From the IMG/VR virus record IMGVR_UViG_3300011934_000017, positions 124,001 through 188,000 of that record: DNA of 64,000 bases; one strand, 5' to 3'. The notes under the pieces were generated by a model. That model was not told the origin of the DNA. It searched no databases and saw only the letters and a program-made list of their open reading frames with translations. Shown in pieces: positions 5,525 to 52,395 of this stretch; within the stretch, counting starts at the first letter, position 1; each line of letters opens with the position of its first letter. Position numbers and translations under genes: made by a program.

Positions 5525-5532
5525 TATTTACA
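5525..5532 (-). promoter_or_regulatory. TGTAAATA motif (candidate phage-sigma promoter)
   Basis: Intergenic, about 45 nt upstream of ssb, correct orientation. Confidence 0.6.
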
Positions 5533-5534
5533 GT

Positions 5535-6551
5535 TTAAGAAATGCCTTCTTCTCGCATCTGGTTTTGCATCAAGGCCAATTCGTCGGCGGTAAAATATTC
5601 ACCTATGTCAAGGTAAAGCCTAGCACACCCAGAAATATCAGCATGTTTAGCTAAGTACATAACGATAGAGTCCGTTTCACCTCGTTCAAAATCGTGGTGT
5701 ATATCTTGGCCGTCACCTAAGACATTGTGCAAGCTTTTGGAGTCGTCTTCACCTGCAAGTTCATCTAGGCTGACGCTGTGATTCATAAAGCCGGTGTTTT
5801 TCTCTGCAATCTTTTTACGGTGGGATTGAGGAACGACATAGGCAATACCGTATTCGTGCTCTACCGTATTGCAGGTCTGAGCATTGAGAATCCACCAATT
5901 TAGATAGGAAGTCAAGGCACCCTTGTTACTATCATACTTATCAATCGCCAGCAAAATGCTTTTAAGAATAGACTGCCGAACATCATGAAAATCAAAATTA
6001 CTTCCGTTTGCATCTATGTGGATTTTGGCTTGCTTGGAAGAAAGCTTTAGATAGTGGTCTAACACTTTGGATCGACATTCATAAAATTTGGCTAAATAGG
6101 AAGCACTGATAGACATAATGCGATAAAAGCCTTGTCTGTCTGTGCGAAGCTGTGAAGCCTGTTTGTCCAATCTTTGCTTTAACTGGAGCCTGTGATTTCT
6201 ATCTGTCGTCATCATAGTGCTGTAGTCAGACAGGTAGTTAGGAAACATACGAAGAACTCTGCCTACGAAAACGTGCAGGAAGGAGCGTTCAAGCCTAGCT
6301 TCTCGTAGGAGTTCGAATTTCTCTGAACGATCCTCAGATACAAGAAACCTACATAGAATTTCTACAGTACGCTCTCTAGGCAAAGAACTGGGTTTTCTTT
6401 TCCTGTTAGCAGACACCAGCACTAAAATATAGGAGACCTGTTCATCAAAAACATCAGAGTTTAATATTATGGGCTCTAAAGCTTTATACAAGAACAGGTC
6501 CATCACTTGCTGGATCTGCTCACCTGTCAAATTTTTAGCAAGCAGAGTCAT
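5535..6551 (-). CDS. phage-encoded sigma70-family RNA polymerase sigma factor
   Basis: Region-2-like DVRQ...LLAIDKYDSNKGALTSYLNWWI; region-3-like SVSLDE. Confidence 0.78.
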   Translation of the reverse strand: MTLLAKNLTGEQIQQVMDLFLYKALEPIILNSDVFDEQVSYILVLVSANRKRKPSSLPRERTVEILCRFLVSEDRSEKFELLREARLERSFLHVFVGRVLRMFPNYLSDYSTMMTTDRNHRLQLKQRLDKQASQLRTDRQGFYRIMSISASYLAKFYECRSKVLDHYLKLSSKQAKIHIDANGSNFDFHDVRQSILKSILLAIDKYDSNKGALTSYLNWWILNAQTCNTVEHEYGIAYVVPQSHRKKIAEKNTGFMNHSVSLDELAGEDDSKSLHNVLGDGQDIHHDFERGETDSIVMYLAKHADISGCARLYLDIGEYFTADELALMQNQMREEGIS

Positions 6552-6559
6552 CGTGTTTC

Positions 6560-7261
6560 CTACTTTTTGAAGTGTTTGCGTACCGCGCGAATGATAAAGC
6601 TGTCGATATTAGTTTTGCTAGGCATGGTACCTGTTTCGGATACGTCCGAAGTGCTTCGGTATGCAATTAAAATATGTTTGGCATTAAGTTCTTCGCCGAC
6701 GATCTTAAAGAAACGATTGGGAATGGAGAATCGAACACCTGCCGTAGCATTGATATACCAGTTCAAGGCTTCTTTGTATTGCTCCAAGTCTTCTTGAAGA
6801 CTTACCTTGTATTCATCCTGCCCTTCTATATAGCGGAGAAGTTCCTTTTGTTCGTGTTTGGCCTCACCAAATTTGTTACGTACTTCATCTAGCGCAGTAA
6901 CGGCTTGTTGGAGCTTAGCCCGTAAAGGTTGTACTTCTTTGTCTTTCGCTTCAAGGTCGGAATTGTGCTGAGCTTCATCCTTATTTTTCTGGGCTTGAAG
7001 CATTTCCACATCGACCAAAGAATCTGCTTCACGCTCAATGAACAGGTCACGTTGAGTACGCAACGCTTTTAGGTTGGCTTCCAACTGCTGACCACGAACC
7101 TGGGACAGATTTAAAGCCTGTTCTGTACGGACAGCCCGTTGATAAAGCTCGTTGTTTTTTGTCGTAACATCGGTCAGTTGAGAACGTAGTTGGCGAATTG
7201 TTTCTTCCAAAGTGAACGGTTCTACGTTTTCAACGACTTCGGTATCTATATTATCAGACAT
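6560..7261 (-). CDS. coiled-coil protein
   Basis: Long heptad-like L/E/Q/K-rich helix. Confidence 0.7.
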   Translation of the reverse strand: MSDNIDTEVVENVEPFTLEETIRQLRSQLTDVTTKNNELYQRAVRTEQALNLSQVRGQQLEANLKALRTQRDLFIEREADSLVDVEMLQAQKNKDEAQHNSDLEAKDKEVQPLRAKLQQAVTALDEVRNKFGEAKHEQKELLRYIEGQDEYKVSLQEDLEQYKEALNWYINATAGVRFSIPNRFFKIVGEELNAKHILIAYRSTSDVSETGTMPSKTNIDSFIIRAVRKHFKK

Positions 7262-7262: not shown

Positions 7263-7931
7263 TCATTTCTCTTTTCGAATTAGCTCACGAGCGGCCGCTA
7301 CAAGATGTTTGCAAAGACCTGGCGCCATGGACGGGTTTGTTACTACGGGTGGTTCGCCGTTGCCGTACACAATACGACTAGCGCCATGTGCAGCATTGGC
7401 ATACTCAAACGTGAATACATAGGATTCACAACTGCAGGAGCATATAATCTTTCTATGTCGATTAATAGGCTTCTTAGCAGGATTGTTTTCTTTATCCAGC
7501 TCAGCACCTATGATGAAAGTGTTGTGCTTCCGTCGAACTTTGTTCGGTCTAAAAGGGTCGTTCGTTATTGCTACTGCTTTTAACGCAGGCAGTCCAGAAC
7601 GTGTTTTGGTGATCTTCTTTTCGTAAAGCTCAACGTCTTGCGAGTTGTTCACCATGAGTCTTGGTGTGCCACGCACAAGCTGGCGCAACGTCATACCTTT
7701 GCGAGACAAATCCGTTTCAGGTAACTGCTTTGGTGTCTTCGGATTCAGTCCTGATAGCTTGTAAGAATAGTTTGGACGACTCACTTTTGCTTTCTTTGGT
7801 TTTCTCGCTTTAGTCTTGCGTTCCATGTCAGAAGATTTAGACTTTCGCTTTGATGCTTCTACCTTTGCTTTGCTTGGTCGTCTGCTTTTGTTATTTTTGG
7901 ACAAAGGAAGCGCTTTGTGTTTCTTTTTCAT
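7263..7931 (-). CDS. SWIM-type Zn-finger protein with basic N-terminus
   Basis: CSCSCESY...LCKHL (CxC...CKH). Confidence 0.7.
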   Translation of the reverse strand: MKKKHKALPLSKNNKSRRPSKAKVEASKRKSKSSDMERKTKARKPKKAKVSRPNYSYKLSGLNPKTPKQLPETDLSRKGMTLRQLVRGTPRLMVNNSQDVELYEKKITKTRSGLPALKAVAITNDPFRPNKVRRKHNTFIIGAELDKENNPAKKPINRHRKIICSCSCESYVFTFEYANAAHGASRIVYGNGEPPVVTNPSMAPGLCKHLVAAARELIRKEK

Positions 7932-8005
7932 ATAAAACCTCCAGGTTGTCTCTCAAATTACAGAAGCAAAACGCCCTTAAAGTCGAGACATACTAGCTAT
8001 TTACG

Positions 8006-8668
8006 CTATTTGGTTTCAGATTCTTTTTCCACCAAACTGAGAAATTGTAGAATAGAGTCTCTGGACCAGTTGTCAAATGTTTTTCCTACGACCGTTCCAT
8101 CGTACTTGGTTTTTGGATCTAACTTGAACCAGAGAACTTCAATAAGCTCGTCCGTTTCTAAAAGGTCTTCATCTTCTCCTAGAAATTTCGAAGAAGGTCT
8201 TGTGTCTGATCTAACAGTTTCTTCGTGGAAGAGATTGCGCCAGCTTTTAGGTTCTGACTCTTCGAACACCATTTGCTGGCCGGTGTGTTCTACAAGCTTA
8301 GCTTTCGGTCCAATGATGTTACTCATATTTTCCATGATACGGGAAAACACCAGTAAATCCATAGAACTGAAATCATCATCTTTGATGCTGAGTGTGAAAG
8401 TTGCTAGCTTTGCAGTTTCCATCTTGCTCTCCTTAGAATATGGGGATTCTGGTTCAGGAATAGGAGTCTCAACAACATCGAGAATTTTAGACATAAAAAG
8501 CTCGTCCTGTTCACCGTGCAACCAAAGGTGAGAGTCTTCCTCTAGTTCCTCATGAAACGGCTCATAGAACCACTCTAATAAAACCCACTTCTTGAAAGGC
8601 TTTCTATGATTCATAGAGGTCAGTACCCAGTACCAACCTGGCTTTCTATTTTTGTCGTTTGTGTTCAT
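8006..8668 (-). CDS. hypothetical protein (possible internal start at 8422)
   Basis: 220-aa ORF; in-frame ATG at 8422 has SD AAGGAG. Confidence 0.65.
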   Translation of the reverse strand: MNTNDKNRKPGWYWVLTSMNHRKPFKKWVLLEWFYEPFHEELEEDSHLWLHGEQDELFMSKILDVVETPIPEPESPYSKESKMETAKLATFTLSIKDDDFSSMDLLVFSRIMENMSNIIGPKAKLVEHTGQQMVFEESEPKSWRNLFHEETVRSDTRPSSKFLGEDEDLLETDELIEVLWFKLDPKTKYDGTVVGKTFDNWSRDSILQFLSLVEKESETK

Positions 8669-9137
8669 TGATAACCTCGAAGGAGCGCTTAGTTATTTCT
8701 TGATGATGTTCCATCAACTCTTTTCGAACTTCTGTCAAAATGCGACCAAGATGATTTTGACCAGTGCCTTCTACTTTACCCCAGAATCTATCGCCATGAT
8801 TGTTTCCTTCTTCTAACACAGCAGGGTACGTACCGATCAGTGAAATAGATAGATCAGGATTCTGTTTAAATTTCATGCGTACAATATTTTTCATCACGCG
8901 AAGCTTAACGTCTTCCCAGTCTTCACGCATAACAACCTTGTATCCAAAATGCTTTGCTTGCTTGGGCGAAGTAGCTTCAGCGATCTTTCGTTTCATCTGC
9001 CTATCACCAGTCTTGGCTGCCTGATAGGCGTGTTCAGAAGTCGGATAAGTAATGCCCCTACGTTCAATAGGGGCTGCATAGAAGTTGCTGAGGAAAAAAT
9101 ACTTTCCTCGAAAGCGATCAATTAGAGTGACGGTCAT
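8646..9137 (-). CDS. NADAR (YbiA-like) family protein
   Basis: FLSNFY, SEHAYQAAK, W...K..VM....KF.QN, E....DRFWG, G.N.LG..L..VR. Confidence 0.93.
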   Translation of the reverse strand: MTVTLIDRFRGKYFFLSNFYAAPIERRGITYPTSEHAYQAAKTGDRQMKRKIAEATSPKQAKHFGYKVVMREDWEDVKLRVMKNIVRMKFKQNPDLSISLIGTYPAVLEEGNNHGDRFWGKVEGTGQNHLGRILTEVRKELMEHHQEITKRSFEVINEHKRQK

Positions 9138-9540
9138 CTTCTAGCTCCTCTTTCAATAAATCTCTTTCGTCAGGACGTATATTGTGTAGAATTTCAATGG
9201 CACTCTGGATGCGATCTTCTGCCGTCATGATACGACCCTGCACCGAGGAATTACCAAAACGCTTGCTACTTCTAAGTCCTTGGCAGACTGCTACTTGGTC
9301 GGACAGTTTATCTAGCAGGTCATAAAACTCTTTTTCAGGATTTTGCTGGGCTTCGTGCCCAATCTTACGTGCTTTCCACTGAACAACACGCTCTTCAGTG
9401 CTTCTTGGTTCTACGTGCGAATACATAGCATCTTCCGCGTTTTCGAATGCGTTTTTAGGACGCACAACACCTAAAGAAAACAAAGACGGATGCAGGTTGC
9501 GAAAGAAAGAGGTAAATGAGGCTTTACGAAGGATTGACAT
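9118..9540 (-). CDS. hypothetical protein (start trimmed from 9783)
   Basis: ATG at 9540 with SD AAGGA; the longer track ORF overlaps the upstream gene. Confidence 0.65.
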   Translation of the reverse strand: MSILRKASFTSFFRNLHPSLFSLGVVRPKNAFENAEDAMYSHVEPRSTEERVVQWKARKIGHEAQQNPEKEFYDLLDKLSDQVAVCQGLRSSKRFGNSSVQGRIMTAEDRIQSAIEILHNIRPDERDLLKEELEDDRHSN

Positions 9541-10406: not shown

Positions 10407-11078
10407 TTAGTTTTGTTTGAGAATTTTCTTTAGCTTACTATATTTACATTCTTTCGTGACGATACCGACGGTCTTTGCTTTTGTCCTAGAGTGCTGTATA
10501 AACTTGGAGTGTAAGCATGACGTGTCTAAGATTAGACCTGAACTAAAGGCGTCCAAAGCTGCCTTCTCAAAAGATTTTACGTCTACTATGTTTGTGGAAA
10601 GTGCAGGACCGTTGGAGAAGACAAGCGCAAACTTGAAACCATCAGATACAGGCAACAGCTTTAAAAAACTCAGATCGAAGCCTGACTGAAAGGCCGAAAA
10701 CAAAACGCAGTGCAATACGTTAGGTTCTATCAGAATAAAAATCTTTCCGTCGTCTTTAAGAACCCTGCTACAAAAAGTGAAGAAAGGGTCCACGTAGAAA
10801 GCCCATGCTTTAGGATGTAGCAAAGCTCGCACATTGAAGTGATAGTGGTCTGGATATGTCAACACAAGACCAACGGATTTATCACTCAGCTTCCTCATGC
10901 CTTCAGACAGATTGGTATAAAATAAAATGGCAGAGCCGTCATCCGTTTGAAAAGCTTTTTGATCACTGCGCTTAACGCGATCATACGCCGACAGTACGTG
11001 GCCTCCATGTACGTCGCATTCCGAAATAATGGAAACATCTATTGCCGTACAACCACAACTATAGACGTTGATCTTCAC
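10407..11078 (-). CDS. degenerate DNA amino-methyltransferase-like protein
   Basis: LSDKSVGLVLTYPDHY (cf. DLI.TDPPY), RVLKDDGKIFI, GLILDTSCLHS (cf. VLDPF.GSG). Confidence 0.5.
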   Translation of the reverse strand: MKINVYSCGCTAIDVSIISECDVHGGHVLSAYDRVKRSDQKAFQTDDGSAILFYTNLSEGMRKLSDKSVGLVLTYPDHYHFNVRALLHPKAWAFYVDPFFTFCSRVLKDDGKIFILIEPNVLHCVLFSAFQSGFDLSFLKLLPVSDGFKFALVFSNGPALSTNIVDVKSFEKAALDAFSSGLILDTSCLHSKFIQHSRTKAKTVGIVTKECKYSKLKKILKQN

Positions 11079-12319: not shown

Positions 12320-12796
12320 TTATAGCTCGTCGTCAAAATCATCGAAGTCGTCAGACTTTGCAGCTTTCTTGGCTTTCTTAGTCTTCTTGCCTTTGGCAGG
12401 AGCAGCTTCATCGGCAGCTTTCTTGGCTTTCTTAGTCTTCTTGCCTTTGGCGGGTGCTTCTTCTTCAGCAGCAGCTTTCTTACCTTTCTTGCCTTTCTTG
12501 CCTTTGGCGGGTGCTTCTTCTTCAGCAGCAGCTTTCTTGCCTTTACCTTTCTTGCCTTTGGCAGGCTTTTCTTCGGCAGCAGCTTTCTTGCCTTTACCTT
12601 TCTTGCCTTTGGCAGGAGCGGCGGCAGCTTCTTCGCCATTTTCTACGACTTCAAGTTGAGCCTGCACGTTTACGATTGCTTCATCGATTTTATTAGCCGC
12701 TTGGCCTAGACTCTTTTCTGAAGCTTGCAAGGCGCGAAGTTCTTTCTTGAGACGTGAAGCTTCGGCGCGCTGTTGAAGTTCTACTGTTTTAGCCAT
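12320..12796 (-). CDS. histone H1-like Lys/Ala-rich protein with tandem repeats
   Basis: Five AAxxxPAKGKKxKKxKK units after an N-terminal coiled coil; ends DDFDDFDDEL. Confidence 0.8.
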   Translation of the reverse strand: MAKTVELQQRAEASRLKKELRALQASEKSLGQAANKIDEAIVNVQAQLEVVENGEEAAAAPAKGKKGKGKKAAAEEKPAKGKKGKGKKAAAEEEAPAKGKKGKKGKKAAAEEEAPAKGKKTKKAKKAADEAAPAKGKKTKKAKKAAKSDDFDDFDDEL

Positions 12797-12852: not shown

Positions 12853-12880
12853 AAGAACGGAAACAACTTCCGTTCTTTTT
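12853..12880. terminator. hairpin between acidic-protein gene and H1-like gene
   Basis: AAAGAACGGAA-ACAAC-TTCCGTTCTTT. Confidence 0.6.
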
Positions 12881-12887
12881 ATTTACA
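12880..12887 (-). promoter_or_regulatory. TGTAAATA motif
   Basis: Intergenic, upstream of the H1-like gene. Confidence 0.55.
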
Positions 12888-12921: not shown

Positions 12922-13314
12922 TTATTCGTCCCAGTCATCGTCATCGTCTTCATCTTCATCATCTTCATCATCTTCATCATCTTCATCATCTTCATCATCT
13001 TCATCTTCATCATCTTCATCGTCGTCGAGGTCTTCATCGTCGTCGAGGTCTTCGTCCTCGTCTTCGTCCTCGTCCTCTTCGTCAGCTTCATCTTCATCTT
13101 CATCTTCATCGTCATCGCCGAAGTCATCATCCTCTTCATCATCACCGGAATCATCTTCACCGTCTGGAACGGATTCGGCAACAGCGTCGGTAAGCGTGTC
13201 TAGCGTATAACCAGCAGCCTGGGCTTCGGACAATAGAGTAAGAATTGCGGAAGCAAGCAGTTCTTCCAAGTTCAGTTTTGGAGCTTTTGCTGCGGTTTTC
13301 TTTGACTTCGCCAT
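12922..13314 (-). CDS. highly acidic protein (poly-D/E C-terminal half)
   Basis: Basic N-terminus, short helix, long D/E tract built of 9-nt tandem repeats; ends DDDDWDE. Confidence 0.8.
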   Translation of the reverse strand: MAKSKKTAAKAPKLNLEELLASAILTLLSEAQAAGYTLDTLTDAVAESVPDGEDDSGDDEEDDDFGDDDEDEDEDEADEEDEDEDEDEDLDDDEDLDDDEDDEDEDDEDDEDDEDDEDDEDEDDDDDWDE

Positions 13315-13390
13315 TTTTAATTCCTCAATACTGATAAGATTTAGTCGAGCATATCGACAGATAGTTTTTACACTTTTACTTCAACTTACT

Positions 13391-14059
13391 TCAGAGGTCT
13401 TCGTCATCTAAGTCGTCGTCTTCTTCCTCGTCGTCGTCTTCATCTTCCTCGTCGTCGAGGTCTTCATCTTCCTCGTCGTCGAGGTCTTCATCTTCCTCGT
13501 CGTCCTCGTCCTCCTCTTCATCTTCGAGGTCTTCATCTTCTTCATCAAAATCTTCTTCTACAGGCTTTTTCTTCTTAGCCTTTCGTGAGGACTTTTCGTT
13601 ATCTTCTTCGTCCGCAAAGACTTCGATGTGGACGTTATCGTTTGAAAAGATTGTAGTAATCTCTCCAGTAACGGAATCTTTTACCGTCAAGGTACCTGTA
13701 GCAGCATCGCGGCGAACAAGACCTTTCACCGTGTACATAAGCTCAGACTTGATAAGGGTGATGCTTGACGGCTCACCTGGCTTACCGAAAACTTTGACAA
13801 CATCGCGGATTAAAAATGTTGAAATGCGAGTCTTTTTTGAGGCGTTAGTTTTCTTATGACGAAACACAACGCCTGTTTCATCGTAGGAGACTAGAAAACC
13901 ATTTAGCGTTACAGGTACGCGCATAGCATAGACGTTTACGGTATGTACCGCTTTCTTCGCGTCTAAGCCTACACCAGCTTTGATGCCGCGTAGACGTTTT
14001 GAAATCTTTTCAGACTGTGATAGGCGACCACGAGGTGCGCGTGTTGCTGACTTAGCCAT
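13391..14059 (-). CDS. beta-rich protein with acidic tail
   Basis: Basic N-terminus, globular middle, D/E tract ending DDLDDEDL. Confidence 0.8.
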   Translation of the reverse strand: MAKSATRAPRGRLSQSEKISKRLRGIKAGVGLDAKKAVHTVNVYAMRVPVTLNGFLVSYDETGVVFRHKKTNASKKTRISTFLIRDVVKVFGKPGEPSSITLIKSELMYTVKGLVRRDAATGTLTVKDSVTGEITTIFSNDNVHIEVFADEEDNEKSSRKAKKKKPVEEDFDEEDEDLEDEEEDEDDEEDEDLDDEEDEDLDDEEDEDDDEEEDDDLDDEDL

Positions 14060-14105: not shown

Positions 14106-14113
14106 TATTTACA
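14106..14113 (-). promoter_or_regulatory. TGTAAATA motif
   Basis: Between terminator hairpin 14124-14143 and start codon 14059. Confidence 0.6.
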
Positions 14114-15376: not shown

Positions 15377-16870
15377 TCACTCGGAAGTAATGATATACAC
15401 TGGAAGCTTCTGTTCTTTATTTACACTTCCCAGTTCTACAGGTCGTGCAATGATTCCAGTGACCTTTTGATCGGGCATACGTTCTGCAAACTTCTCAACG
15501 TATTTACAGTAGGCTTTTTCTGTAAGCGGACCTCCTTTCGTTCTAAGAACCGAGTAGTCGTCAAACAAATTGTCGTTGGTCACAGCAAAACCGTTCGATT
15601 GCAAATGTCGATTAACGTGCTGACCGACAGGTATAGGACGAACGTTACCGCGACTGCCGTAGTAAATGTCAGAAGCGACAAACCTGAAGTAGTTTTCAGG
15701 GCTACGAATGAACTGGTCAATGCGATACTTTGCATTGGCGTCCCGCAGCGAATCGAGGGACCTCTTGAGCTTTTCAATTTTGCTCTGAAGCAGAGGGACA
15801 GCTTTGCCTTGCTTGATTATCTCAGCATTCTTTTTGATAGAAGAGGCGGCAGCTTTAAGTTCGGCTGCCTCTTCGTAATTCTTTTTACGCTTTGCGCGGC
15901 TGTGTTTCTTGCGCGCCTCTTCAAACAGGTCTTTCAGACGTTCTAATTCGGAACCGTCTTTGATTCTTTTAATCTTCTCTTTCTTCTGGTCAATGTCATC
16001 CAATAGATCAACTACTTCAGGGCAGTCTACTATGGGTCTACGTTCTTCGTTCAGAGTACCTAGAAAATAATCGAACAAGGCAGAGACGGACTTAACTTCA
16101 GGTAGATGCGACTTGATGCTGTCTTTCATCGAGTCTGGAACAGTCAGTGTACCAGCCACAACAAAATAGTTTGCAGGACCAGAAAGCAATTCTGATACGT
16201 TACCGTGATAATCAGGATTGATCAGACGTTTGCCGTTAGAGCCAATGTAATTCGGTATGTCTAACTTGATAGCAACATCAAGACTAACGCGCTCACCGTC
16301 TAGGCCACCGATACGCACGTCATACAGGTAACTGTAGCTTCGCTTTTCGGTCTTGTGAATACGATAAACCACAAACATGCGCAGACCTGCGAGAAGTGGT
16401 GATATCAAATAACTGCCTTCAGGCACACCTCGAACAGGCTCTTTTTTGTACTGAGGTAACATCGAGGTATAGATATCATCCAACATCGCAGGATAAGCGT
16501 ATTCTTCAAGATTCGAAATGTGTTTTTTCAAATCACTCTGGCATTCTTCAAACTCAAGAGGACCAGAACCAAGTAGCGCGAAGTTTGCCCACGACATACC
16601 GTGAGCGTCGCTTTCTGGAACACCAAGACCTACAGAATACATCATGGACAGCGTGTACATGTCATCAGTATTACCTGACGTGGCACCTTTAGCAATCTTT
16701 TCGACTACCGTCTTCGCAAGATTAGGCATAATATTTGCGGTCTCTTCATCGGTTAAGTAAAGAGGGAAGTCCAAGATAGAGCCAGGATACGGAGTATGAA
16801 CAACGCAGCGCTCGACCATGAACAAACGGTAAAAAAGATCGCTCAAAGGCTCATGTAACTGATCCATCAT
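15377..16870 (-). CDS. SEL1-repeat plus degenerate NAD-ligase adenylation-like domain with coiled-coil/UVR insert
   Basis: MYTLSMMYSVGLGVPESDAHGMSW (SEL1-like); SPLLAGLRMFVVY, VVAGTL, FVASD, LQSNGF, VTGIIAR in ligase-motif order; NYEEAAELK (UVR-like). Confidence 0.45.
   Translation of the reverse strand: MMDQLHEPLSDLFYRLFMVERCVVHTPYPGSILDFPLYLTDEETANIMPNLAKTVVEKIAKGATSGNTDDMYTLSMMYSVGLGVPESDAHGMSWANFALLGSGPLEFEECQSDLKKHISNLEEYAYPAMLDDIYTSMLPQYKKEPVRGVPEGSYLISPLLAGLRMFVVYRIHKTEKRSYSYLYDVRIGGLDGERVSLDVAIKLDIPNYIGSNGKRLINPDYHGNVSELLSGPANYFVVAGTLTVPDSMKDSIKSHLPEVKSVSALFDYFLGTLNEERRPIVDCPEVVDLLDDIDQKKEKIKRIKDGSELERLKDLFEEARKKHSRAKRKKNYEEAAELKAAASSIKKNAEIIKQGKAVPLLQSKIEKLKRSLDSLRDANAKYRIDQFIRSPENYFRFVASDIYYGSRGNVRPIPVGQHVNRHLQSNGFAVTNDNLFDDYSVLRTKGGPLTEKAYCKYVEKFAERMPDQKVTGIIARPVELGSVNKEQKLPVYIITSE
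15418..15425 (-). promoter_or_regulatory. TGTAAATA motif
   Basis: At the end of the upstream gene, about 50 nt before the 15366 start. Confidence 0.45.
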
Positions 16871-17234
16871 TTTTCTCCACCTGTTTTCGTATTCCGTTTA
16901 CATTGTCTGCAAACTCCAGAATAACATTAATCTCTTCGTCTTCTACTTGGTTATTTACAGCATTGAGAAACAGCTTTCTTTGCATGACACAAATGGCCTC
17001 GTCCGTAATGTGCGTACGGAACGCAACGAGGTCTTCATTAGCATGGATAAAAACATCATTCACCTGCTCTATGAATTTAGGTGAAAGATTGCGTTCACTC
17101 TTTTCAGTCGAGACAAATTCAGGAGAAAACAACACAGGTAAGGGATTGCCTGCTTGTGTTGTACCAGACTCTGATTCCATTATAGCAAAATAACGCTGTA
17201 GAAAAGTTCTTACACTAGGTGTACTCATTTTCAA
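16851..17234 (-). CDS. hypothetical protein
   Basis: 127-aa ORF in operon. Confidence 0.65.
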   Translation of the reverse strand: MKMSTPSVRTFLQRYFAIMESESGTTQAGNPLPVLFSPEFVSTEKSERNLSPKFIEQVNDVFIHANEDLVAFRTHITDEAICVMQRKLFLNAVNNQVEDEEINVILEFADNVNGIRKQVEKNDGSVT

Positions 17235-19582: not shown

Positions 19583-19617
19583 GATGATATCTCTCTCTGT
19601 ATTTGCTTGCTTAAATT

Positions 19618-19709
19618 GAACGTTAACTAGCACCGTAACCAAATTTCTATCTGCTCGTTTTGGCTCGCTGCTACATCTTCATTATATCACATCTACAACC
19701 GCTCTGCAA
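19618..19709 (-). promoter_or_regulatory. sigma70-type promoter plus 28-bp element, copy 2
   Basis: TTGCAG-17-TATAAT (19686-19681); element 19645-19618. Confidence 0.85.
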
Positions 19710-19797
19710 CAACTTTCTGCTGTGGTGGTGTGAGGTGTGCTGTGGTGCAGTCGAATCAAAGATTGCACGGTGAGGGGGCGCTGCCCCCTCTGGTATA

Positions 19798-20169: not shown

Positions 20170-20200
20170 GATGTTGCCTCTTCAATTTACAGTTTAGGTT

Positions 20201-20292
20201 GAACGTTAACAAGCGCCGTAACCAAATTGCGCTGCTCTCGTTTTTGCTTGGTCTTACATCTTCATTATATCACATCTGAGACCACACCACAA
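20201..20292 (-). promoter_or_regulatory. sigma70-type promoter plus 28-bp element, copy 3
   Basis: TTGTGG-17-TATAAT (20269-20264); element 20228-20201. Confidence 0.85.
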
Positions 20293-20319
20293 CGACTTTC
20301 TGCTGTGGTGTGGTGCGTA

Positions 20320-20694: not shown

Positions 20695-20701
20695 GTTGTC
20701 A

Positions 20702-23914: not shown

Positions 23915-23921
23915 GATATAT

Positions 23922-24967: not shown

Positions 24968-24988
24968 GATGTTTCTCCAAGATACAAG

Positions 24989-25080: not shown

Positions 25081-25106
25081 GGACTCTAATTGCTGAGGAG
25101 AATACT

Positions 25107-29802: not shown

Positions 29803-29810
29803 TATTTACA
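29803..29810 (-). promoter_or_regulatory. TGTAAATA motif
   Basis: Between terminator and gyrB start. Confidence 0.6.
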
Positions 29811-34179: not shown

Positions 34180-34216
34180 TGTAAATATAGTCATTATTTA
34201 CACATAAATGTAAATA
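34180..34216. promoter_or_regulatory. three TGTAAATA motifs in the divergent Cas4-like/primase gap
   Basis: Plus 34180-34187, minus 34195-34202, plus 34209-34216. Confidence 0.6.
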
Positions 34217-36499: not shown

Positions 36500-36507
36500 T
36501 ATTTACA
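36500..36507 (-). promoter_or_regulatory. TGTAAATA motif
   Basis: At the ruvC stop, about 25 nt upstream of start 36474. Confidence 0.55.
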
Positions 36508-40400: not shown

Positions 40401-41360
40401 CGTGTCTGAAGCGTGACGCTGAAACATCAAATGTAACAGAGTGTTAACCATGCAAAAGCACTCTACAGGGCTGTTTGAAAGCATTGGGGGCGTCATCCAT
40501 GCAAAACCAATGCTTTTGCATGTCTGTAAGCAAAATACCTTGTTACAATTCGTTACAAAAAAGTTTTGTGTGGAAGAAATGCGTTTTTAGACCGTTTGGA
40601 GCCTCTGTCCTGTTAAAAAACGTCAAAATATCAACCTTGTTTTTTAGACGCCTTAAAATCAGGCTAAAAATCACTCATTTTTAACGATTTCCTCAAAACC
40701 AAAAAGTGTCAATACGCAGTATTGGCGCAGATTGCGTTGAGCAGCAAAGCGTGAAGAGCTAAGCGAGGCGCAGCCGAGCATTAGCGATGATGCTTGAGTA
40801 ATGCCTCAGCAAACAAGAGACGCTAGGCGGCGCGAACACTTAGAGCCCGTCTCGTCCAGAAGCGTTGAGCGCAGCGAATAAGCGAAGGGGTTCCAAGCGA
40901 AGCGTTAAGCGTTCCAAGCGCTGCGAGGCAGCGCGATAGCAACGAGCGTAGCGAGTTGCTTAAAAGAACCTATCCTACGCGATCCTACGACTGATTCATT
41001 TAAAGAACGTTAAGCAATTAAAAATTGCATTCTTTTGGATCATGTTAAAACAGGCCGAACTCTGTCTTTGCTAAGACCATAGCAGACCTTAAAACAAGGT
41101 GAATTAATAGGACGTGTGGAATTAAATGAGCCAGTCGTAGGACTGCGTAGTGTTGTATAATGTTAAAGGTCCAACTCGCTACGCTCGTCGTCCCTAACGC
41201 TGCTTCGCAGCGTTTCTCTAATCCTTTCCGCTTCGCGGTACCGCGGGCTAACGCCCGCTCTCGCTCACTTCGTTCGCTCACCTTAAAAAACCTAATTTGT
41301 CAGTTCAAAAATCAAAGTCTTTTCAAGACAAACTTTTTAAATGAAAAACTTTTGTTGCGC
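40401..41360. other. about 1-kb non-coding region, candidate replication origin
   Basis: A/T tracts, then a purine-rich GCGAAGC/GAGCG flank, an AT-rich core and a mirror pyrimidine-rich hairpin flank; 17-bp inverted repeat 40942-40958 / 41172-41188. Confidence 0.5.
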
Positions 41361-41368: not shown

Positions 41369-41376
41369 TGTAAATA
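41369..41376 (+). promoter_or_regulatory. TGTAAATA motif upstream of the modification operon
   Basis: 33 nt before ATG 41410. Confidence 0.6.
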
Positions 41377-41409: not shown

Positions 41410-42885
41410 ATGGGAAAACAGTTACCCGAAGAGCTAAGGTATCAGCTTCTTGTTTTCGACTATAAGAAAGCTAACAAGGCACGCAAGCTCTGGAAAAAAC
41501 GTAAAGGAGATAAGGATAAAGAAGCCCATAAAAAGTTTTGCTATGGATTAGGAGCAAAGCTAGACGTTTCTCCGAAAGTAGTTAGCTTCATCGTCAAAAA
41601 CAATAAATGGGCAGATCAAAAGCCCGCAGAGCATGTAAAATCATTACCAACAGGCCTTCAAGAATACGATAAACCTTCTTTGAAGCCTGAAGCCTTAGTC
41701 AGAGGAAGAGAATTATACATATCTCCTAAAAACTGGCGCAGGCTCAACGAGCATTACACCAAAGGAAAAATAAAGAAAGCTATTGTTCGCGCTGTTAGAA
41801 AGCTAGATTTACCTGCACCTGTTCAACCTATAAGCCAAGAGCAAGCAGATGATAGCTTTCGAGCACTGAAAAAGTTGCGTTCTGACAGCATGATAAAACG
41901 TATGCCTACCTGCACACGGTGGGATTATAAATACGGTATTTCCGACGTTGTTATTGACGCACCTCGAACAGGAAACGAATGCTCAAACTTTTATCATCAG
42001 GAGTCACGTTGGTGGTGCGACTATCAGAGTATTCCGTCACCGATGAAAGTATGGAATTCTGATCTTCACATGTATTCCATGATGAATGCTTTATGGACGT
42101 TGAAGTTTAAGAAGATTACAGGACCAGAGCTTCGCACAGCTATAAGTGTCCGTAAATATGTGGCTAGTCAGTTTAAACCTTCTGCCGCCAAAGCGTTTTA
42201 CGAGCTATTTGACTGCAAGCACGTTTACGATCCTTCCAGTGGCTGGGGAGACCGTCTAGCAGGCTTCATGGCAGCTAAATGCACCAAGTCCTATTGCTCT
42301 ACGGATCCCAACAGCAGACTGTACGACGACTATGAATTGCAGAAAAATCGGTACGGTGGAAAGAAAGAAATAAACATGTACTGTCACGGTAGTGAAATCA
42401 AAGGTGGTGTTCGCAAGATGTACGGACACAGAGTTGATACTGTCTTTACTTCGCCTCCTTATTTCAATGCCGAACGCTACAGCGAAGACGAAGGCCAAAG
42501 CTTTAGGCAGTTTGATGAAATAAGTGCGTGGCGTGAAAATTTCCTGTTTCCTTCTTTGAAAAATGCGTGGAATGCTTTGACTTCAGAAGGTGAACGCGGT
42601 GGCATTCTAGCAATCAATATTTCGGACATATACAACTCTTCGGATAAAACTCGCGGTGAGATATGCGACCCTATGAACGATTACATATCTTCGCTGAAAG
42701 GTGCTCGATACATCGGTTGTATTGGTTTGCGTCTAGCTAAACGTCCTGAGAGCGGTGCACTTGAAGGTAAACAAGGTGCAAGTATCGAACCTATCTGGGT
42801 CTGGGCTAAAGGTGGCTCTTGGGAGCTAGACGATTATATAGATAACGGATTTAAGACTAAGAAAGTAAAAGGTCTTTGGGGATAA
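41410..42885 (+). CDS. DNA amino-methyltransferase (N4-C/N6-A type)
   Basis: FKPS.AK, SAM motif YDPSSGWGDRL, catalytic FTSPPYF; SD GGAG before ATG 41410. Confidence 0.85.
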   Translation: MGKQLPEELRYQLLVFDYKKANKARKLWKKRKGDKDKEAHKKFCYGLGAKLDVSPKVVSFIVKNNKWADQKPAEHVKSLPTGLQEYDKPSLKPEALVRGRELYISPKNWRRLNEHYTKGKIKKAIVRAVRKLDLPAPVQPISQEQADDSFRALKKLRSDSMIKRMPTCTRWDYKYGISDVVIDAPRTGNECSNFYHQESRWWCDYQSIPSPMKVWNSDLHMYSMMNALWTLKFKKITGPELRTAISVRKYVASQFKPSAAKAFYELFDCKHVYDPSSGWGDRLAGFMAAKCTKSYCSTDPNSRLYDDYELQKNRYGGKKEINMYCHGSEIKGGVRKMYGHRVDTVFTSPPYFNAERYSEDEGQSFRQFDEISAWRENFLFPSLKNAWNALTSEGERGGILAINISDIYNSSDKTRGEICDPMNDYISSLKGARYIGCIGLRLAKRPESGALEGKQGASIEPIWVWAKGGSWELDDYIDNGFKTKKVKGLWG

Positions 42886-44420: not shown

Positions 44421-45263
44421 ATGGGCAAGCCGAAAGTTAAAGAATGTTTGATACGTAACCTGGAAAGATATGACGGACCTTTTGCTGTTCTTCTGTCGGG
44501 TGGTGCAGACAGTCACGCTAATCTTTTCGCATTACTTGAGATGGGCGCAGACGTACACGTATATAGCTGCACCTTAGAAGACAGGGAAAGCAGGGATTTT
44601 ATTTGTGCTCGCAGGACTGCTGAAATCTTTGATCTACCTTTCACACCTGTTATTTTACCTACAGACCTCGACCAGCTCCTTGTAGATATTCGAGAGAACA
44701 TGAGTCTTATCGGAACAAAAGGCAAGGTAGAGGTAGAAGCTTTATGGGCGTTTCGTAAAGCCGTTGATATTATAACAGAACCTAGTATCGTCAGCGGTCT
44801 GTCAGCAGGTATGTATTTTTGTTTGACCAAGAAAGGCAGCATACACTACGCACATACAGGAAGAATCGACGAATATCGTAGAGAGACATTTAAAAGAGCC
44901 TCTAATCCTAATAATCAAGGGGCCAAGATGAAACGATATTCGAAAAGCGTTGGAAAGAAGTGGATAAATCCTTGGATAACCCGAGGAATGCTAAAGACGT
45001 TCTTAGGAACTACATGGGAAGATGTAAATAAACCACGACAAAAAGAAGCGATCCGCGCAGACTTTGAAAAATACTTTGCAAAAACCAAAGTGTTTAATCA
45101 ACGAGACATGCACAAAGGTGATAGCGGTATGTCTGAGCTATTCGCTAAATTGTTGGAAGACCCTAAGGTAAATGTTAGGAATCATAAATCTGTTGTTGGT
45201 ATCTACAATATGATACGAGCAGAAGAGCTGGCCAGAGTAAATAAAGGCCCTGGCTTGTTCTAG
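44421..45263 (+). CDS. asparagine-synthetase C-terminal-like PP-loop ATP pyrophosphatase (no glutaminase domain)
   Basis: AVLLSGGADS, D...AR..A..F.L, VSG.SAG, NPW, KE..R..F. Confidence 0.8.
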   Translation: MGKPKVKECLIRNLERYDGPFAVLLSGGADSHANLFALLEMGADVHVYSCTLEDRESRDFICARRTAEIFDLPFTPVILPTDLDQLLVDIRENMSLIGTKGKVEVEALWAFRKAVDIITEPSIVSGLSAGMYFCLTKKGSIHYAHTGRIDEYRRETFKRASNPNNQGAKMKRYSKSVGKKWINPWITRGMLKTFLGTTWEDVNKPRQKEAIRADFEKYFAKTKVFNQRDMHKGDSGMSELFAKLLEDPKVNVRNHKSVVGIYNMIRAEELARVNKGPGLF

Positions 45264-46963: not shown

Positions 46964-47009
46964 TTCTAGCAGGGAAGCTTTTTAGCTTCCCTTTTTTAGG
47001 TTCAAATAG

Positions 47010-47017
47010 TGTAAATA
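47010..47017 (+). promoter_or_regulatory. TGTAAATA motif
   Basis: Intergenic, 35 nt before ATG 47053. Confidence 0.55.
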
Positions 47018-47052: not shown

Positions 47053-47766
47053 ATGAACCTAACTAAAATCATGGAAAACAATTCAAGGCTGTTCTCTCAC
47101 GTTATAATCCCTAGACGAAGCGCTCCTACAAAAATTCGTCCCATTTTACCTCTCAAGATTAAGTTTCTAACAAAACCTAATTCTAAGCAAATCCTTTATT
47201 CTGGTTTGTACTTTTGCATTCCAGATAATCTTCTGTTTTACGAAATGGACTTACTAGAAAAGGCAATTATAAGCAGGTTGCCTGACATTTCTCAACCTTT
47301 GAACATACCGTATAGTCTGGTTACGAAACTAGATCCGTCATTTTATGGATACATAAATGGATTTCACGTCGAAGACAATAAGGCTTATATAGAATCTGCG
47401 AATTGTCTTTTTGTTAATCCTGACTCACCTTTATTACCTACGTCGCTCGAAGACCCTGCTTATGGTGTACTGCTTCCCCTTTATGAGGCGTCTGCTTGCT
47501 TATCTTATCTGTTAGCTTCCATATCCCTATATAGAGCTGGTGACTTTGATACTCTACCTACGATGCTAGAGAAGACTTGGAGTAAAGTAGAAAAAGCTTC
47601 AGGTGTAAATATGACTAAAGCATCTTTCATCGACGGTATGTTTAGAATCGGTCCTGACTTATTTGGTAACTCTATAGAAGATGATTGTGTGGCTCCCGGA
47701 CTTGCGCATCTTCTAGGTAGCTTTTTGTCTTTAGATACTGACGTGTCGAAACATTTGGAGTGGTAA
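47053..47766 (+). CDS. hypothetical protein (start trimmed)
   Basis: The track ORF's GTG start overlaps the upstream gene; first ATG is at 47053. Confidence 0.65.
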   Translation: MNLTKIMENNSRLFSHVIIPRRSAPTKIRPILPLKIKFLTKPNSKQILYSGLYFCIPDNLLFYEMDLLEKAIISRLPDISQPLNIPYSLVTKLDPSFYGYINGFHVEDNKAYIESANCLFVNPDSPLLPTSLEDPAYGVLLPLYEASACLSYLLASISLYRAGDFDTLPTMLEKTWSKVEKASGVNMTKASFIDGMFRIGPDLFGNSIEDDCVAPGLAHLLGSFLSLDTDVSKHLEW

Positions 47767-51292: not shown

Positions 51293-51302
51293 GGGTACCA
51301 CC

Positions 51303-51635
51303 ATGTTCCGTCAGCGATTTTCTTGTCTGAATCTTCCTCAGCACCAGTTCAACGATACGTTTCGACTTTGGTTATCGGACTTGGATATCGCTAGACCCTT
51401 TTTGTTGGATGCTGATTGTGAAGAGTATTTTGTAATAGGTCAAAACGCTTTCAGCTTCATTGTACGTATGGAAGATCGAAGCTACCATTCTGTGCCTGCA
51501 CAAGGATTAGATAATTATCTAGGCTTGCTAAACAATGTAAAAGTCTACGGTAACGCATTAAGCAAATCCGATAATAAAAAAGCTTTTGACCTACACGACA
51601 ACGACATTGAATATAGGATAGAATACAAATGTTAG
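51303..51635 (+). CDS. hypothetical protein
   Basis: ATG at 51303 after AAGGG. Confidence 0.6.
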   Translation: MFRQRFSCLNLPQHQFNDTFRLWLSDLDIARPFLLDADCEEYFVIGQNAFSFIVRMEDRSYHSVPAQGLDNYLGLLNNVKVYGNALSKSDNKKAFDLHDNDIEYRIEYKC

Positions 51636-52387
51636 TTCTTGGTTCCGCTAACCACTCTCCCGATTTTATTTTGGTTTACCTGAAAAAGAAACTCAAAGCA
51701 GAAGAAAACAGAATAGCGCTGATAGCCTCCGAGACACGTATAGTAAACAAACGAAAGCCTTTCGACTTCTATATTTTTCTGAATCCTAAGGCGTTGCGTC
51801 GGAACCTGAAAATCGTGAATAAATTGGACAGTGTAGGTATTGTTTGCGGTCCACCTATTGAGCTAAACAACTTCGAAAATTTAATGCCTTTAGATCACGA
51901 AGAGTCTGACTCTCCACATCTGGAGGCTTTTTTGTTGGACACAATAGATAGAAACTCCTTTAAGCCGAAACAGTCACAACCTATTGTGTATCGTTCTATT
52001 GACTATGCTATGGTTGTGCAGGACAAAGTGGAGTCTTTTACAGGTATCCTCACGTCTTTTATGACGTTTGTTTATACGATGCCTAGCTCTTCGCACCAGA
52101 AACCCGTTAAAGAATTGGCGTGTAAATGGTTGGTCAGCGGAGCGTCTTTGGAGCAGCTAGAGAAAAAGCTCCAAGAGCTAACGAAAGACGTATACCTTAC
52201 AGATAAGCAGAAGGCCCGATTCCTTTCGTTGTTGAGTTCTGAATCGGCATTGGCATACAAGGACGCCTTACAAGAAGCTAAACAATACTCCATAGACAGC
52301 ATAGATTTCCGCAATATTGCAGACAAGCATTCCGTGTCAGCTTACGAAATGCGCTATATGCTGTCCGTTGTAAAAGCTCTGAAGTAG
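51629..52387 (+). CDS. hypothetical protein in the replication block
   Basis: 252-aa ORF overlapping the previous stop. Confidence 0.7.
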   Translation: MLVLGSANHSPDFILVYLKKKLKAEENRIALIASETRIVNKRKPFDFYIFLNPKALRRNLKIVNKLDSVGIVCGPPIELNNFENLMPLDHEESDSPHLEAFLLDTIDRNSFKPKQSQPIVYRSIDYAMVVQDKVESFTGILTSFMTFVYTMPSSSHQKPVKELACKWLVSGASLEQLEKKLQELTKDVYLTDKQKARFLSLLSSESALAYKDALQEAKQYSIDSIDFRNIADKHSVSAYEMRYMLSVVKALK

Positions 52388-52395
52388 TGTAAATA
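52388..52395 (+). promoter_or_regulatory. TGTAAATA motif
   Basis: In a 31-nt gap upstream of 52419. Confidence 0.6.

What the first reader, a model, noticed from the sequence alone, without database searches (positions are those of the whole stretch)
5525..52395. TGTAAATA: probable promoter for the phage sigma factor
Seen by eye: minus-strand copies at 5525, 12880, 14106, 15418, 15501, 16952, 29803, 34195 and 36500, and plus-strand copies at 34180, 34209, 41369, 47010, 47604 and 52388. Most sit in short gaps, 20-90 nt ahead of a start codon and in the right orientation, often just after a terminator. Downstream genes are replication, nucleoid and modification genes, and none of them has the 28-bp element. 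Established: T4 late promoters are a lone TATAAATA box read by the phage sigma gp55. Inference: this is an analogous middle/late promoter class for the sigma at 5535-6551.
Basis: partly seen in the sequence, partly recalled or inferred. Interest (0 to 1): 0.6.

Follow-up and report, generated by a model that had tools for sequence, protein, structure and literature searches.

The report
Conserved jumbo-phage replication-gene promoter box
TGTAAATA is a real, strongly enriched promoter-type box in front of this jumbo phage's DNA-replication genes; it is shared with distant relatives and was already predicted in phage Lu11, but which phage factor reads it is still not shown.

Summary
TGTAAATA occurs 18 times in the window (about 2 expected) and 34 times in the complete 220-kb phage genome. 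It is the most upstream-enriched 8-mer: 22 of 34 copies lie 10-90 nt before a co-oriented start codon. A purine 7 nt downstream and Shine-Dalgarno sites as close as +11 place it at the -10 region, with no -35 element. It precedes SSB, topoisomerase II, primase, a Cas4-like nuclease, clamp loader, SbcCD, DNA polymerases, a helicase, ligase and dNTP enzymes, so it marks a replication ('middle') regulon rather than a late one. The same box is the top upstream word in Yoloswag, Vibrio phage GR11A, Xanthomonas PhiXhv-16 and (core GTAAATA) P. putida phage Aura, and it occupies the sigma-to-SSB gap in 10 of 10 relatives. Lu11's GenBank record already calls it a 'putative middle/late promoter'. The link to the sigma at 5535-6551 is plausible but unproven. 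That protein has a sigma70-like fold and no recognisable region 4. However, the genome also has an early class (TGaTATAAT), a separate late box (TAATTT, before virion genes) and a probable second sigma-like gene. The sigma gene itself lies inside TGTAAATA-driven units.

The parts
5525..5532 (-). TGTAAATA copy in the 53-nt gap between the sigma gene and SSB (4378-5481); 43 nt before the ATG
   Evidence: SSB by PHROG; the syntenic gap carries the box or a 1-2 mismatch variant in 10 of 10 relatives
10441..10448 (-).
12880..12887 (-). Intergenic copy, 83 nt before the ATG of 12320-12796; followed by a stable hairpin that would lie in the 5'UTR
14106..14113 (-). Intergenic copy just after a hairpin, 46 nt before the ATG of 13391-14059
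15418..15425 (-). Copy in the 3' end of ORF 15377-16870, 51 nt before the ATG at 15366
15501..15508 (-). Intragenic co-oriented copy, poor flanks (12-13 bits or less); probably not functional
16952..16959 (-). Copy 81 nt before the ATG of 15377-16870, inside or overlapping a weak upstream ORF; possible promoter
29803..29810 (-). Intergenic copy just after a terminator hairpin, 30 nt before the topoisomerase II (GyrB-like) gene 27727-29772
34180..34187 (+). Distal of two plus-strand copies before the primase gene (34250-35230), in a divergent junction
34195..34202 (-). Minus-strand copy in the same divergent junction, 28 nt before the Cas4-like nuclease gene (33129-34166)
   Evidence: the Cas4-like orthologue in GR11A also follows the box
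34209..34216 (+). Proximal copy, 33 nt before the primase ATG
36500..36507 (-). Copy overlapping the stop codon of 36503-37087, 25 nt before the ATG of 35920-36474
41369..41376 (+). Intergenic copy (best PWM score in the window), 33 nt before 41410-42885; the operon includes a thymidylate-synthase-like gene
45023..45030 (+).
47010..47017 (+). Copy just after a terminator (46971-46992), 35 nt before 47053-47766; the operon continues with clamp loader and SbcC
   Evidence: the clamp loader in GR11A also follows the box
47604..47611 (+). Intragenic copy 157 nt before the clamp-loader gene; weak flanks; doubtful
52388..52395 (+). Copy starting right after the stop codon of 51629-52387, 23 nt before 52419-52604 and then SbcD. 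The Shine-Dalgarno site starts 11 nt after the box, so the start site must lie within 10 nt of it
54577..54584 (-).
7998..8005 (-). One-mismatch variant CGTAAATA with good flanks, 66 nt before 7263-7931, the first gene of the unit that ends with the sigma gene
13365..13372 (-). One-mismatch variant TGTAAAAA, 50 nt before 12922-13314
40707..40714 (+). One-mismatch variant TGTCAATA (the form found before PaBG's SSB gene), intergenic
5535..6551 (-). Sigma70-family gene (338 aa), the candidate reader of the box. Regions 1.2-NCR-2-like, a disordered linker and a small C-terminal bundle; no recognisable region 4 HTH

Best explanation
TGTAAATA, with an A-rich 5' flank (a-a-A-[G/C]-TGTAAATA) and a purine 7 nt downstream, is the -10-region element of a phage-specific promoter class with no -35 element. 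It drives the DNA-replication, recombination and nucleotide-metabolism ('middle') regulon of this RNAP-less jumbo phage. Shown: enrichment, position, orientation, regulon content, and conservation of both box and regulon across a wide clade. Inferred: host core RNA polymerase reads it with a phage-encoded sigma-family subunit, most likely the protein encoded at 5535-6551. That protein has a sigma70-type region 2 and no region 4. Its gene lies within the same regulon, so it would reinforce its own synthesis after a first supply by read-through or basal transcription. Transcripts would start about 7 nt after the box. This is the phiEco32 gp36 pattern: a sigma made from a middle gene, lacking region 4, that reads a single element with start sites 6-8 bp downstream. 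Early genes use host sigma70 at TGaTATAAT promoters, and virion genes use a separate TAATTT box.
For: - Enrichment and position.
- -10 placement: a purine at +7 in 90 of 108 copies in own, Yoloswag and Lu11 (p = 1e-12), and in 15 of 18 copies in PhiXhv-16. The Shine-Dalgarno site starts 11 nt after the box at 52388. No conserved position within 20 nt upstream beyond the A-tract.
- Both divergent junctions carry outward-facing copies, at window 34180-34216 and genome 95182/95208. This argues for initiation rather than RNA processing.
- Regulon. The same orthologues (SSB, Cas4-like nuclease, clamp loader) follow the box in GR11A.
- Conservation: it is the top upstream word in Yoloswag, GR11A, PhiXhv-16 and Aura. 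The sigma-to-SSB gap carries it in 10 of 10 relatives, and 34 of 35 copies in six metagenomic loci are co-oriented with the genes.
- Not host-type: two-hexamer sigma70 sites are not enriched, and a distinct perfect extended -10 class exists.
- No phage RNAP and no gp55 or gp33.
- Sigma: fold matches to sigma70. Its most conserved stretch is region 2.3/2.4 plus the following segment. It co-occurs with the box in all seven genomes, including PhiXhv-16 where the second sigma-like gene is not detected.
- Precedent: PMC8948821.
Against: - There is no transcript data: only DNA runs from stromatolite and microbial-mat metagenomes hold the sequence.
- The sigma gene sits 1-3 genes downstream of a TGTAAATA-type box in L057-L060, GR11A and Yoloswag. 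It has no early promoter within 13 kb here or 38 kb in GR11A. By cascade logic it could instead be a product of this regulon that reads the next class.
- A separate late box (TAATTT) needs a reader.
- A second, probably sigma-like protein is conserved in six of seven genomes.
- TAAATA lacks the T at -7 expected for a sigma70-type region 2, and PaBG tolerates C or G at box position 4, so the register is uncertain.
- At the junction heading the sigma operon, this genome and its two closest relatives have TGTAATTT rather than TGTAAATA.
Confidence: 0.55

Rival explanations
1. TGTAAATA is a middle promoter, but the window's sigma does not read it. It is read by the second sigma-like protein (genome 119527-120666, outside the window) or by host sigma70 holoenzyme altered by an early phage protein. 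The sigma at 5535-6551 is made from this regulon and reads the late TAATTT box, as T4 gene 55 does: it sits among replication genes and directs late transcription.
For: - The sigma gene lies within TGTAAATA-driven units in all relatives and is far from early promoters.
- TAATTT precedes both tail-sheath genes, a virion structural protein and a tail protein. It fits the TAnnnT rule expected of a sigma70-like region 2 that keeps the Y..WW residues.
- Residues 137-243 of the second protein align to sigma2 domains (RpoE Z 8.3, rmsd 2.8 A over 83 residues; SigE, SigR, sigma28), and two-domain sigma hits span 141-379. It is conserved as far as GR11A and Aura. The PaBG authors reported an HHpred sigmaE-like hit for its homologue (PMC7412058).
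Against: - The second protein shows no sigma signal by Pfam or PDB sequence search, and Foldseek is not significant. Z around 8 is middling for a helical protein.
- It appears to have a sigma4-like C-terminal domain, yet neither box has a -35 partner.
- It is undetected in PhiXhv-16, which keeps both the box and the sigma.
- TAATTT is much less enriched in GR11A (11 of 72) and Aura (2 of 9) than TGTAAATA, while the sigma's region 2 is its most conserved part.
- phiEco32 shows that a middle-gene sigma can read middle promoters.
- No known factor re-specifies -10 recognition by sigma70.
Confidence: 0.3
2. The box is not an initiation signal. It is a site for a DNA-binding regulator or nucleoid protein, or an RNA-level signal (processing or stability site) in polycistronic transcripts.
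For: - Two junctions hold inverted pairs that could look like operators: TGTAAATA-N7-TATTTACA at 34180-34202 and TGTAAATA-N18-TATTTACA at genome 95182-95215.
- Lu11 has many intragenic copies with the full extended consensus.
- Some copies lie in the last codons of upstream genes.
Against: - The motif is asymmetric and strand-locked to the downstream gene: 29 of 34 copies here and 34 of 35 in relatives.
- The spacing of the two inverted pairs differs (7 vs 18 nt), as expected for back-to-back promoters rather than one operator.
- Divergent junctions have no upstream transcript to process, yet they carry copies facing both ways.
- The distance to the ATG varies from 23 to 83 nt, so it is not a translational operator.
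- The purine at +7 is conserved.
- Several copies follow terminators, where re-initiation is needed.
Confidence: 0.08
3. The excess is a compositional or coding artefact with no function.
For: Four of the 18 window copies are intragenic or antisense and look like chance matches.
Against: - 0 of 100 shuffles reach 18 copies.
- No same-composition word is as frequent, and the positional bias has p = 3e-17.
- The box was rediscovered independently as the top upstream word in four other genomes with 45-55% GC.
Confidence: 0.01

Closest known systems
Lu11 'putative middle/late promoter' (GenBank NC_017972 regulatory features; Adriaenssens et al. 2012, J Virol 86:6369; paper not held, annotation read)
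   Same: Same core (C)TGTAAATA with an A-rich 5' flank. Same syntenic site between the sigma gene and SSB. Same phage group, and a sigma orthologue at 46% identity.
   Different: Lu11's annotated 16-mer extends 3' to a GTA that is only weakly present here. The class is a prediction in Lu11 too, with no start sites mapped. Lu11 has many intragenic copies. The record does not separate middle from late, whereas here virion genes carry a different box.
phiEco32 gp36-dependent middle/late promoters (single element tAATGTAtA; PMC8948821)
   Same: A single conserved element with no -35. Start sites 6-8 bp downstream (a purine at +7 is predicted here). A phage sigma without region 4 that is itself a middle-gene product. 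Host sigma70 reads the early promoters.
   Different: A different sequence and an unrelated small podovirus. gp36 is experimentally proven and serves late genes as well. Here nothing has been tested, and late genes have their own box.
T4 late promoters (TATAAATA read by gp55 with gp33 and the gp45 clamp; established knowledge)
   Same: An 8-bp lone -10-region box that differs at one position (G for A at position 2). The sigma gene is embedded among replication genes.
   Different: The regulon is replication genes, not virion genes. No gp55 or gp33 homologue is detectable. The candidate sigma is a 338-aa protein with a sigma70-like fold rather than a 185-aa minimal factor.
Bacterial extended -10 promoters (TGnTATAAT, sigma70; established knowledge)
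   Same: A TG dinucleotide just 5' of an A/T-rich hexamer, and independence from a -35 element.
   Different: The TG abuts the hexamer or, in the other register, T-12 and T-7 are missing. A true extended -10 class (TGaTATAAT with a TTG -35) coexists in the same genome as the early class.
SPO1 cascade (host sigmaA early, gp28 middle, gp33/34 late; established knowledge, PMC13401047 abstract)
   Same: Three promoter tiers and possibly two phage sigma-like proteins on host core RNAP.
   Different: SPO1 promoters are bipartite (-35 and -10). The second sigma here is only a structural inference.

Membership tests
Lu11-type middle/late promoter class of PaBG/Lu11-group ('Lupandier') jumbo phages | Core sequence CTGTAAATA with an A-rich 5' flank | tested here: met
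   Own consensus is a-a-A-[G/C]-TGTAAATA; Lu11 is aaaAC-TGTAAATA
Lu11-type middle/late promoter class of PaBG/Lu11-group ('Lupandier') jumbo phages | Located shortly upstream of genes and co-oriented with them | tested here: met
   22 of 34 copies lie 10-90 nt upstream; 29 of 34 are co-oriented
Lu11-type middle/late promoter class of PaBG/Lu11-group ('Lupandier') jumbo phages | Host genome belongs to the group (orthologous sigma, SSB, RecA synteny) | tested here: met
   Sigma is 52% identical to PaBG and 46% to Lu11; the order sigma-SSB-RecA is conserved
Lu11-type middle/late promoter class of PaBG/Lu11-group ('Lupandier') jumbo phages | Downstream GTA at +5 to +7 of the annotated 16-mer | tested here: inconclusive
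   Clear in Lu11 (A at +7 in 30 of 40 copies). Here only the purine at +7 is conserved (27 of 34)
Lu11-type middle/late promoter class of PaBG/Lu11-group ('Lupandier') jumbo phages | Transcription actually starts there at middle times | not testable with these tools
   No RNA runs hold the sequence; no transcriptomics found for any relative
T4-type late promoter system | Box TATAAATA | tested here: not met
   G at position 2 in the enriched word. The T4 form TATAAATA appeared only as scattered one-mismatch matches in the relatives' loci; its enrichment in this genome was not tested
T4-type late promoter system | gp55-type minimal sigma and gp33 co-activator encoded | tested here: not met
   phrog_234, phrog_12791, phrog_254 and PF16805 give no match at E <= 1 in the complete genome
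T4-type late promoter system | Drives virion (late) genes | tested here: not met
   Downstream genes are replication and nucleotide-metabolism genes; only the portal and a doubtful tail-tube copy are structural
T4-type late promoter system | Lone -10-region element without a -35 | tested here: met
   No conserved upstream positions; purine at +7; Shine-Dalgarno site within 11 nt
Sigma70 extended -10 promoter | TGn followed by a TAnnnT hexamer | tested here: not met
   TG-TAAATA lacks the spacer base and the T at -7. A separate class with a perfect TGaTATAAT exists
T4 MotA-type middle promoter | Activator box near -30 plus a sigma70 -10 element | tested here: not met
   No conserved -10 downstream of the box. 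The box lies 23-30 nt from the ATG at several genes, with the Shine-Dalgarno site in between
Sigma70 family (ORF 5535-6551) | Region 2 with the conserved aromatic melting residues | tested here: met
   Sigma70_r2 scores 23.2 bits in hmmscan (cut-off 24) and 25.9 bits in the genome search. The Y..WW motif aligns to SigA. phrog_17569 E = 3e-113
Sigma70 family (ORF 5535-6551) | Sigma fold | tested here: met
   Model pLDDT 83. The top 29 Foldseek hits are sigma70 chains (E about 1e-4, prob 1.0), including 1SIG
Sigma70 family (ORF 5535-6551) | Region 4 HTH for -35 recognition | tested here: inconclusive
   No Pfam region 4 hit. The C-terminus is a 50-aa bundle that is truncated in the GR11A and Aura orthologues. 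The domain was not folded or searched on its own
Sigma70 family (ORF 5535-6551) | Binds host core RNAP and confers promoter specificity | not testable with these tools
   Needs biochemistry

The most novel reading that the evidence does not exclude
TGTAAATA and the conserved sigma70-like protein form an ancient, host-independent middle-transcription module. It is shared by a superclade of RNAP-less jumbo phages infecting Pseudomonas, Erwinia, Dickeya, Xanthomonas, Vibrio and uncultured mat bacteria. The 8-bp box and its replication regulon have stayed fixed while the sigma diverged to 24% identity. The module would sit in a three-tier cascade: a host extended -10 early class, then an autoregulated phage sigma on TGTAAATA, then a second phage sigma-like factor on the TAATTT late box.
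Probability: 0.3. Interest if true: 0.6.

Novelty: new member of a known kind. Interest (0 to 1): 0.45.

Why it matters
Most jumbo phages have no RNA polymerase of their own and are assumed to redirect the host enzyme with their own sigma factors, but no promoter-sigma pair has been shown for this large group. A box this well conserved, with a defined regulon and a defined candidate sigma, makes that question testable in culturable relatives (Yoloswag, Lu11, GR11A). It also gives annotators a simple marker for middle-gene units in metagenomic jumbo-phage contigs. It does not reveal a new kind of mechanism.

Tried and rejected
- Public reads: one search found only DNA contigs from stromatolite and microbial-mat metagenomes and no RNA. 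Read laying was therefore not used, since contigs cannot show 5' ends.
- Literature: the Lu11 announcement is not held. A full-text search for the 8-mer returned only primer noise. No transcriptomics turned up for any relative.
- Host-type promoters: consensus scans were at or below shuffle level. They also missed the real early class, because its -35 matches only 3 of 6 positions.
- Continuum of boxes: I considered one continuum TGTAA[A/T]T[A/T] and rejected it. The intermediates TAAATT (5 of 83) and TAATTA (2 of 38) are not upstream-enriched.
- Phyletic profiling to separate the two sigma-like genes was not decisive. Both are present in six of seven genomes, and only PhiXhv-16 lacks a detectable second one.
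- Distance from early promoters was also not decisive: neither gene is close to one.
- MotA-like -30 box reading: rejected on spacing.
- Phage-encoded RNAP reading the box: no beta, beta' or T7-type hit. phiKZ-type subunits are very divergent and could escape Pfam, and the T7-type model rang in no control genome.
- My simple gene caller works poorly on Lu11 (only 6 of 40 copies counted as upstream), so Lu11's positional figures were not used.
- Complex prediction, the large representative search and the protein atlas were not needed.
Full report
**Context.** The window is bases 124001-188000 of a complete 220,237-bp phage genome with direct terminal repeats and 44% GC. The only public runs that hold the sequence are stromatolite and microbial-mat metagenomes. 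The ORF at 5535-6551(-) is 52% identical to the 'RpoD subfamily sigma' of Pseudomonas phage PaBG, 46% to Lu11 gp174 and 37-41% to the Yoloswag and Alexandra Erwinia phages. This is the 'Lupandier' group of jumbo phages (PMC7412058). The gene order sigma-SSB-RecA is conserved.

**Observation.** Three more exist at 10441(-), 45023(+) and 54577(-).
- The window holds 18 copies against 2.15 expected, and the genome holds 34.
- No word made of the same letters is as frequent (279 controls, maximum 30).
- 22 of 34 copies lie 10-90 nt before a co-oriented start, against 7.4% for the controls (p = 3e-17). 29 of 34 copies face the same way as the nearest gene.
- In an unbiased scan of all 8-mers, TGTAAATA is the most upstream-enriched word (p = 3e-18).
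- A PWM built from the promoter-like copies adds only five near-matches. Three are intergenic and co-oriented: CGTAAATA at 7998, TGTAAAAA at 13365 and TGTCAATA at 40707.
- In the window 14 of 18 copies are promoter-like. Three are intragenic (15501, 45023, 47604) and one is antisense (54577).
- A strong hairpin lies directly upstream of only 5 of 22 promoter-like copies, against 7% of random windows. 'Often after a terminator' is therefore an overstatement.

**Anatomy.**
- The consensus extends 5' as a-a-A-[G/C]-TGTAAATA. Nothing further upstream is conserved, so there is no -35 element.
- Seven nucleotides after the box there is a purine in 27 of 34 copies here, 28 of 34 in Yoloswag, 35 of 40 in Lu11 (pooled p = 1e-12) and 15 of 18 in PhiXhv-16. 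This is what a start site would look like if TAAATA occupies -12 to -7.
- At 52388 the Shine-Dalgarno site begins 11 nt after the box. The box therefore cannot be a -30 activator site.
- Both divergent gene junctions carry outward-facing copies, at window 34180/34195/34209 and genome 95182/95208. The spacing differs (7 vs 18 nt), as expected for back-to-back promoters and not for one operator or an RNA-processing site.

**Regulon.** Genes directly downstream are SSB, topoisomerase II, the Cas4-like nuclease, primase, a thymidylate-synthase-like operon, the clamp-loader/SbcC operon and SbcD in the window. Elsewhere in the genome they are the ligase operon, dCMP deaminase, thymidylate synthase, a 2004-aa helicase and two DNA-polymerase genes. 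Only the portal gene and a doubtful tail-tube copy are structural. This is a replication ('middle') regulon, not a late one.

**Other promoter classes in the same genome.**
- Early class. The element is therefore a 5'UTR feature of host-type early transcripts. Window copies are at 2439, 19681, 20264, 20790, 24010 and 25052, with a variant near 30703.
- Late class. TAATTT (often [G/C]TAATTT or TATAATTT) lies 12-90 nt upstream of a start in 20 of 61 copies. It precedes both tail-sheath paralogues, a virion structural protein and a tail protein.
- The two phage boxes are discrete. The intermediates TAAATT and TAATTA are not enriched.
- Classical two-hexamer sigma70 sites are at or below shuffle level here and in three relatives.

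**Conservation.**
- Lu11's GenBank record annotates 16-mers beginning CTGTAAATA as 'putative middle/late promoter', one of them in the gap before SSB. It separately annotates sigma70-like early promoters.
- TGTAAATA is the top upstream word in Yoloswag (24 of 34 within 100 nt of a start, p = 2e-21) and in Vibrio phage GR11A (22 of 28, p = 4e-22). It is among the top words in Xanthomonas phage PhiXhv-16 (tCC-TGTAAATA). Its core is the top word in P. putida phage Aura (GTAAATAG, 10 of 11). In these three phages the sigma is only 24-26% identical.
- PaBG (56% GC) keeps a degenerate gAAAC-TGT-n-AA.
- The sigma-to-SSB junction carries the box or a 1-2-mismatch variant in 10 of 10 genomes. In six metagenomic relatives 34 of 35 exact copies face the same way as the genes.
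- In GR11A the box precedes the orthologous SSB, Cas4-like nuclease and clamp loader, plus a helicase, a clamp and a Holliday-junction resolvase. No virion genes follow it. GR11A also has a clear early class, TTGCA-N17-TGGTATAAT.

**Who reads it?**
- The genome has no detectable RNAP beta or beta' subunit or T7-type RNAP and no gp55 or gp33 homologue.
- It has one Sigma70_r2 hit, the window ORF. Its model (pLDDT 83) matches E. coli sigma70 chains, including the 1.2-NCR-2 fragment 1SIG.
- It keeps the Y..WW melting residues.
- Its most conserved stretch across seven phages is residues 201-240, which is region 2.3/2.4 plus the following HEYG segment.
- After a disordered linker it ends in a small helical bundle with no recognisable region 4. 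This bundle is truncated in GR11A and Aura. That suits a single-element promoter, as argued for phiEco32 gp36 (PMC8948821).

**Three facts keep the assignment open.**
- First, a second protein (genome 119527-120666, a homologue of PaBG gene 112) is conserved in six of seven genomes. Its model aligns to sigma2 domains, and in several rows to sigma2 plus sigma4. The Z values of 6-8 are middling for a helical protein, and neither a sequence-level signal nor a significant Foldseek hit was found.
- Second, the sigma gene always lies one to three genes downstream of a TGTAAATA-type box and far from any early promoter. That fits positive autoregulation, with phiEco32 gp36 as a middle-gene precedent. 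It fits equally a T4-like cascade in which the sigma reads the next class.
- Third, at the junction heading the sigma operon, this genome and its two closest relatives carry TGTAATTT while the others carry TGTAAATA.

**Verdict and odds.** On balance I put about 0.85-0.9 on 'promoter of the replication regulon'. I put about 0.55 on 'read by the window's sigma', alone or together with the late box. I put about 0.3 on 'the sigma reads the late box and another factor reads TGTAAATA'. The element is a new member of a promoter class already predicted in Lu11. What this analysis adds is the -10 placement, the replication-only regulon, the three-tier layout and the unexpectedly wide conservation. None of these has been tested experimentally.

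Noticed in passing
window 2439, 19681, 20264, 20790, 24010, 25052 (-), variant near 30775; 28-bp element at 2367-2403, 19610-19646, 20193-20229, 24981-25017, 30703-30739: Early promoter class: an invariant TGaTATAAT (perfect extended -10) with a TTG-type -35 at 17 bp. About 35 nt downstream lies the conserved element AATTTGGTTACGGCGCT-GTTAACGTTC, which is therefore in the 5'UTR just before small ORFs. It may be an operator or an RNA element for early-gene shut-off.
   Followed up: partly
window 7955, 34227, 37114 (-), 62763 (+); genome 20394, 68803, 107627, 212740 and others: A second phage-specific box, (G/C)TAATTT(A/G), sometimes TATAATTT. 20 of 61 copies lie 12-90 nt upstream of a start. 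It precedes tail-sheath, virion and tail genes, so it is a probable late promoter class. It is also enriched in Yoloswag (GCTAATTT), Lu11 (TAATTTAA) and PhiXhv-16.
   Followed up: partly
genome 119527-120666 (-), 3.3 kb left of the window (L054:3524-4666): A conserved 380-aa protein (phrog_19229, homologue of PaBG gene 112). Residues 137-243 of its model align to sigma2 domains (RpoE Z 8.3), and two-domain sigma hits span 141-379. It is a probable second, very divergent sigma-like factor.
   Followed up: partly
window 12922-13314, 13391-14059, 18005-19590, 4378-4700 (all -): Long runs of GAT/GAA-type codons give poly-Asp/Glu tails in several proteins, including the SSB C-terminus. ORF 12320-12796 has five 54-57-nt Lys/Ala-rich repeats (12352-12624) and looks histone H1-like. 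These are possibly nucleoid or DNA-mimic proteins.
   Followed up: no
window 20692-20798 and 23912-24018; 19611-19732, 20194-20315, 24982-25103: Near-identical 107-nt (96%) and 122-nt repeats that hold the early promoter plus leader. They suggest duplication of early-gene cassettes.
   Followed up: no
L058:12345-15263 and 7660-9336; L059:7543-9264: Relatives carry inteins (with a LAGLIDADG domain in one) in RecA and in a gene two positions upstream of the sigma gene. The window's orthologues have none.
   Followed up: no
L056:12376-12723: One relative has an Acb2/Tad1-hairpin (anti-CBASS/Thoeris sponge) family gene inserted between SSB and RecA.
   Followed up: no
Lu11 record, e.g. L001:2034, 2388, 15278: Lu11 has many copies with the full extended consensus (aaaAC-TGTAAATA) inside annotated genes, in the sense orientation. 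They could be internal promoters, or the box may have another role there.
   Followed up: no
L055 (GC 55%), positions 241, 1637, 2413, 7524, 11028, 18048: In this GC-richer close relative the recurrent form is TGTAAAGA rather than TGTAAATA. Aura uses GGTAAATAG and PaBG uses AAACTGTnAA. This is natural variation that could be used for sigma-promoter covariation analysis.
   Followed up: no
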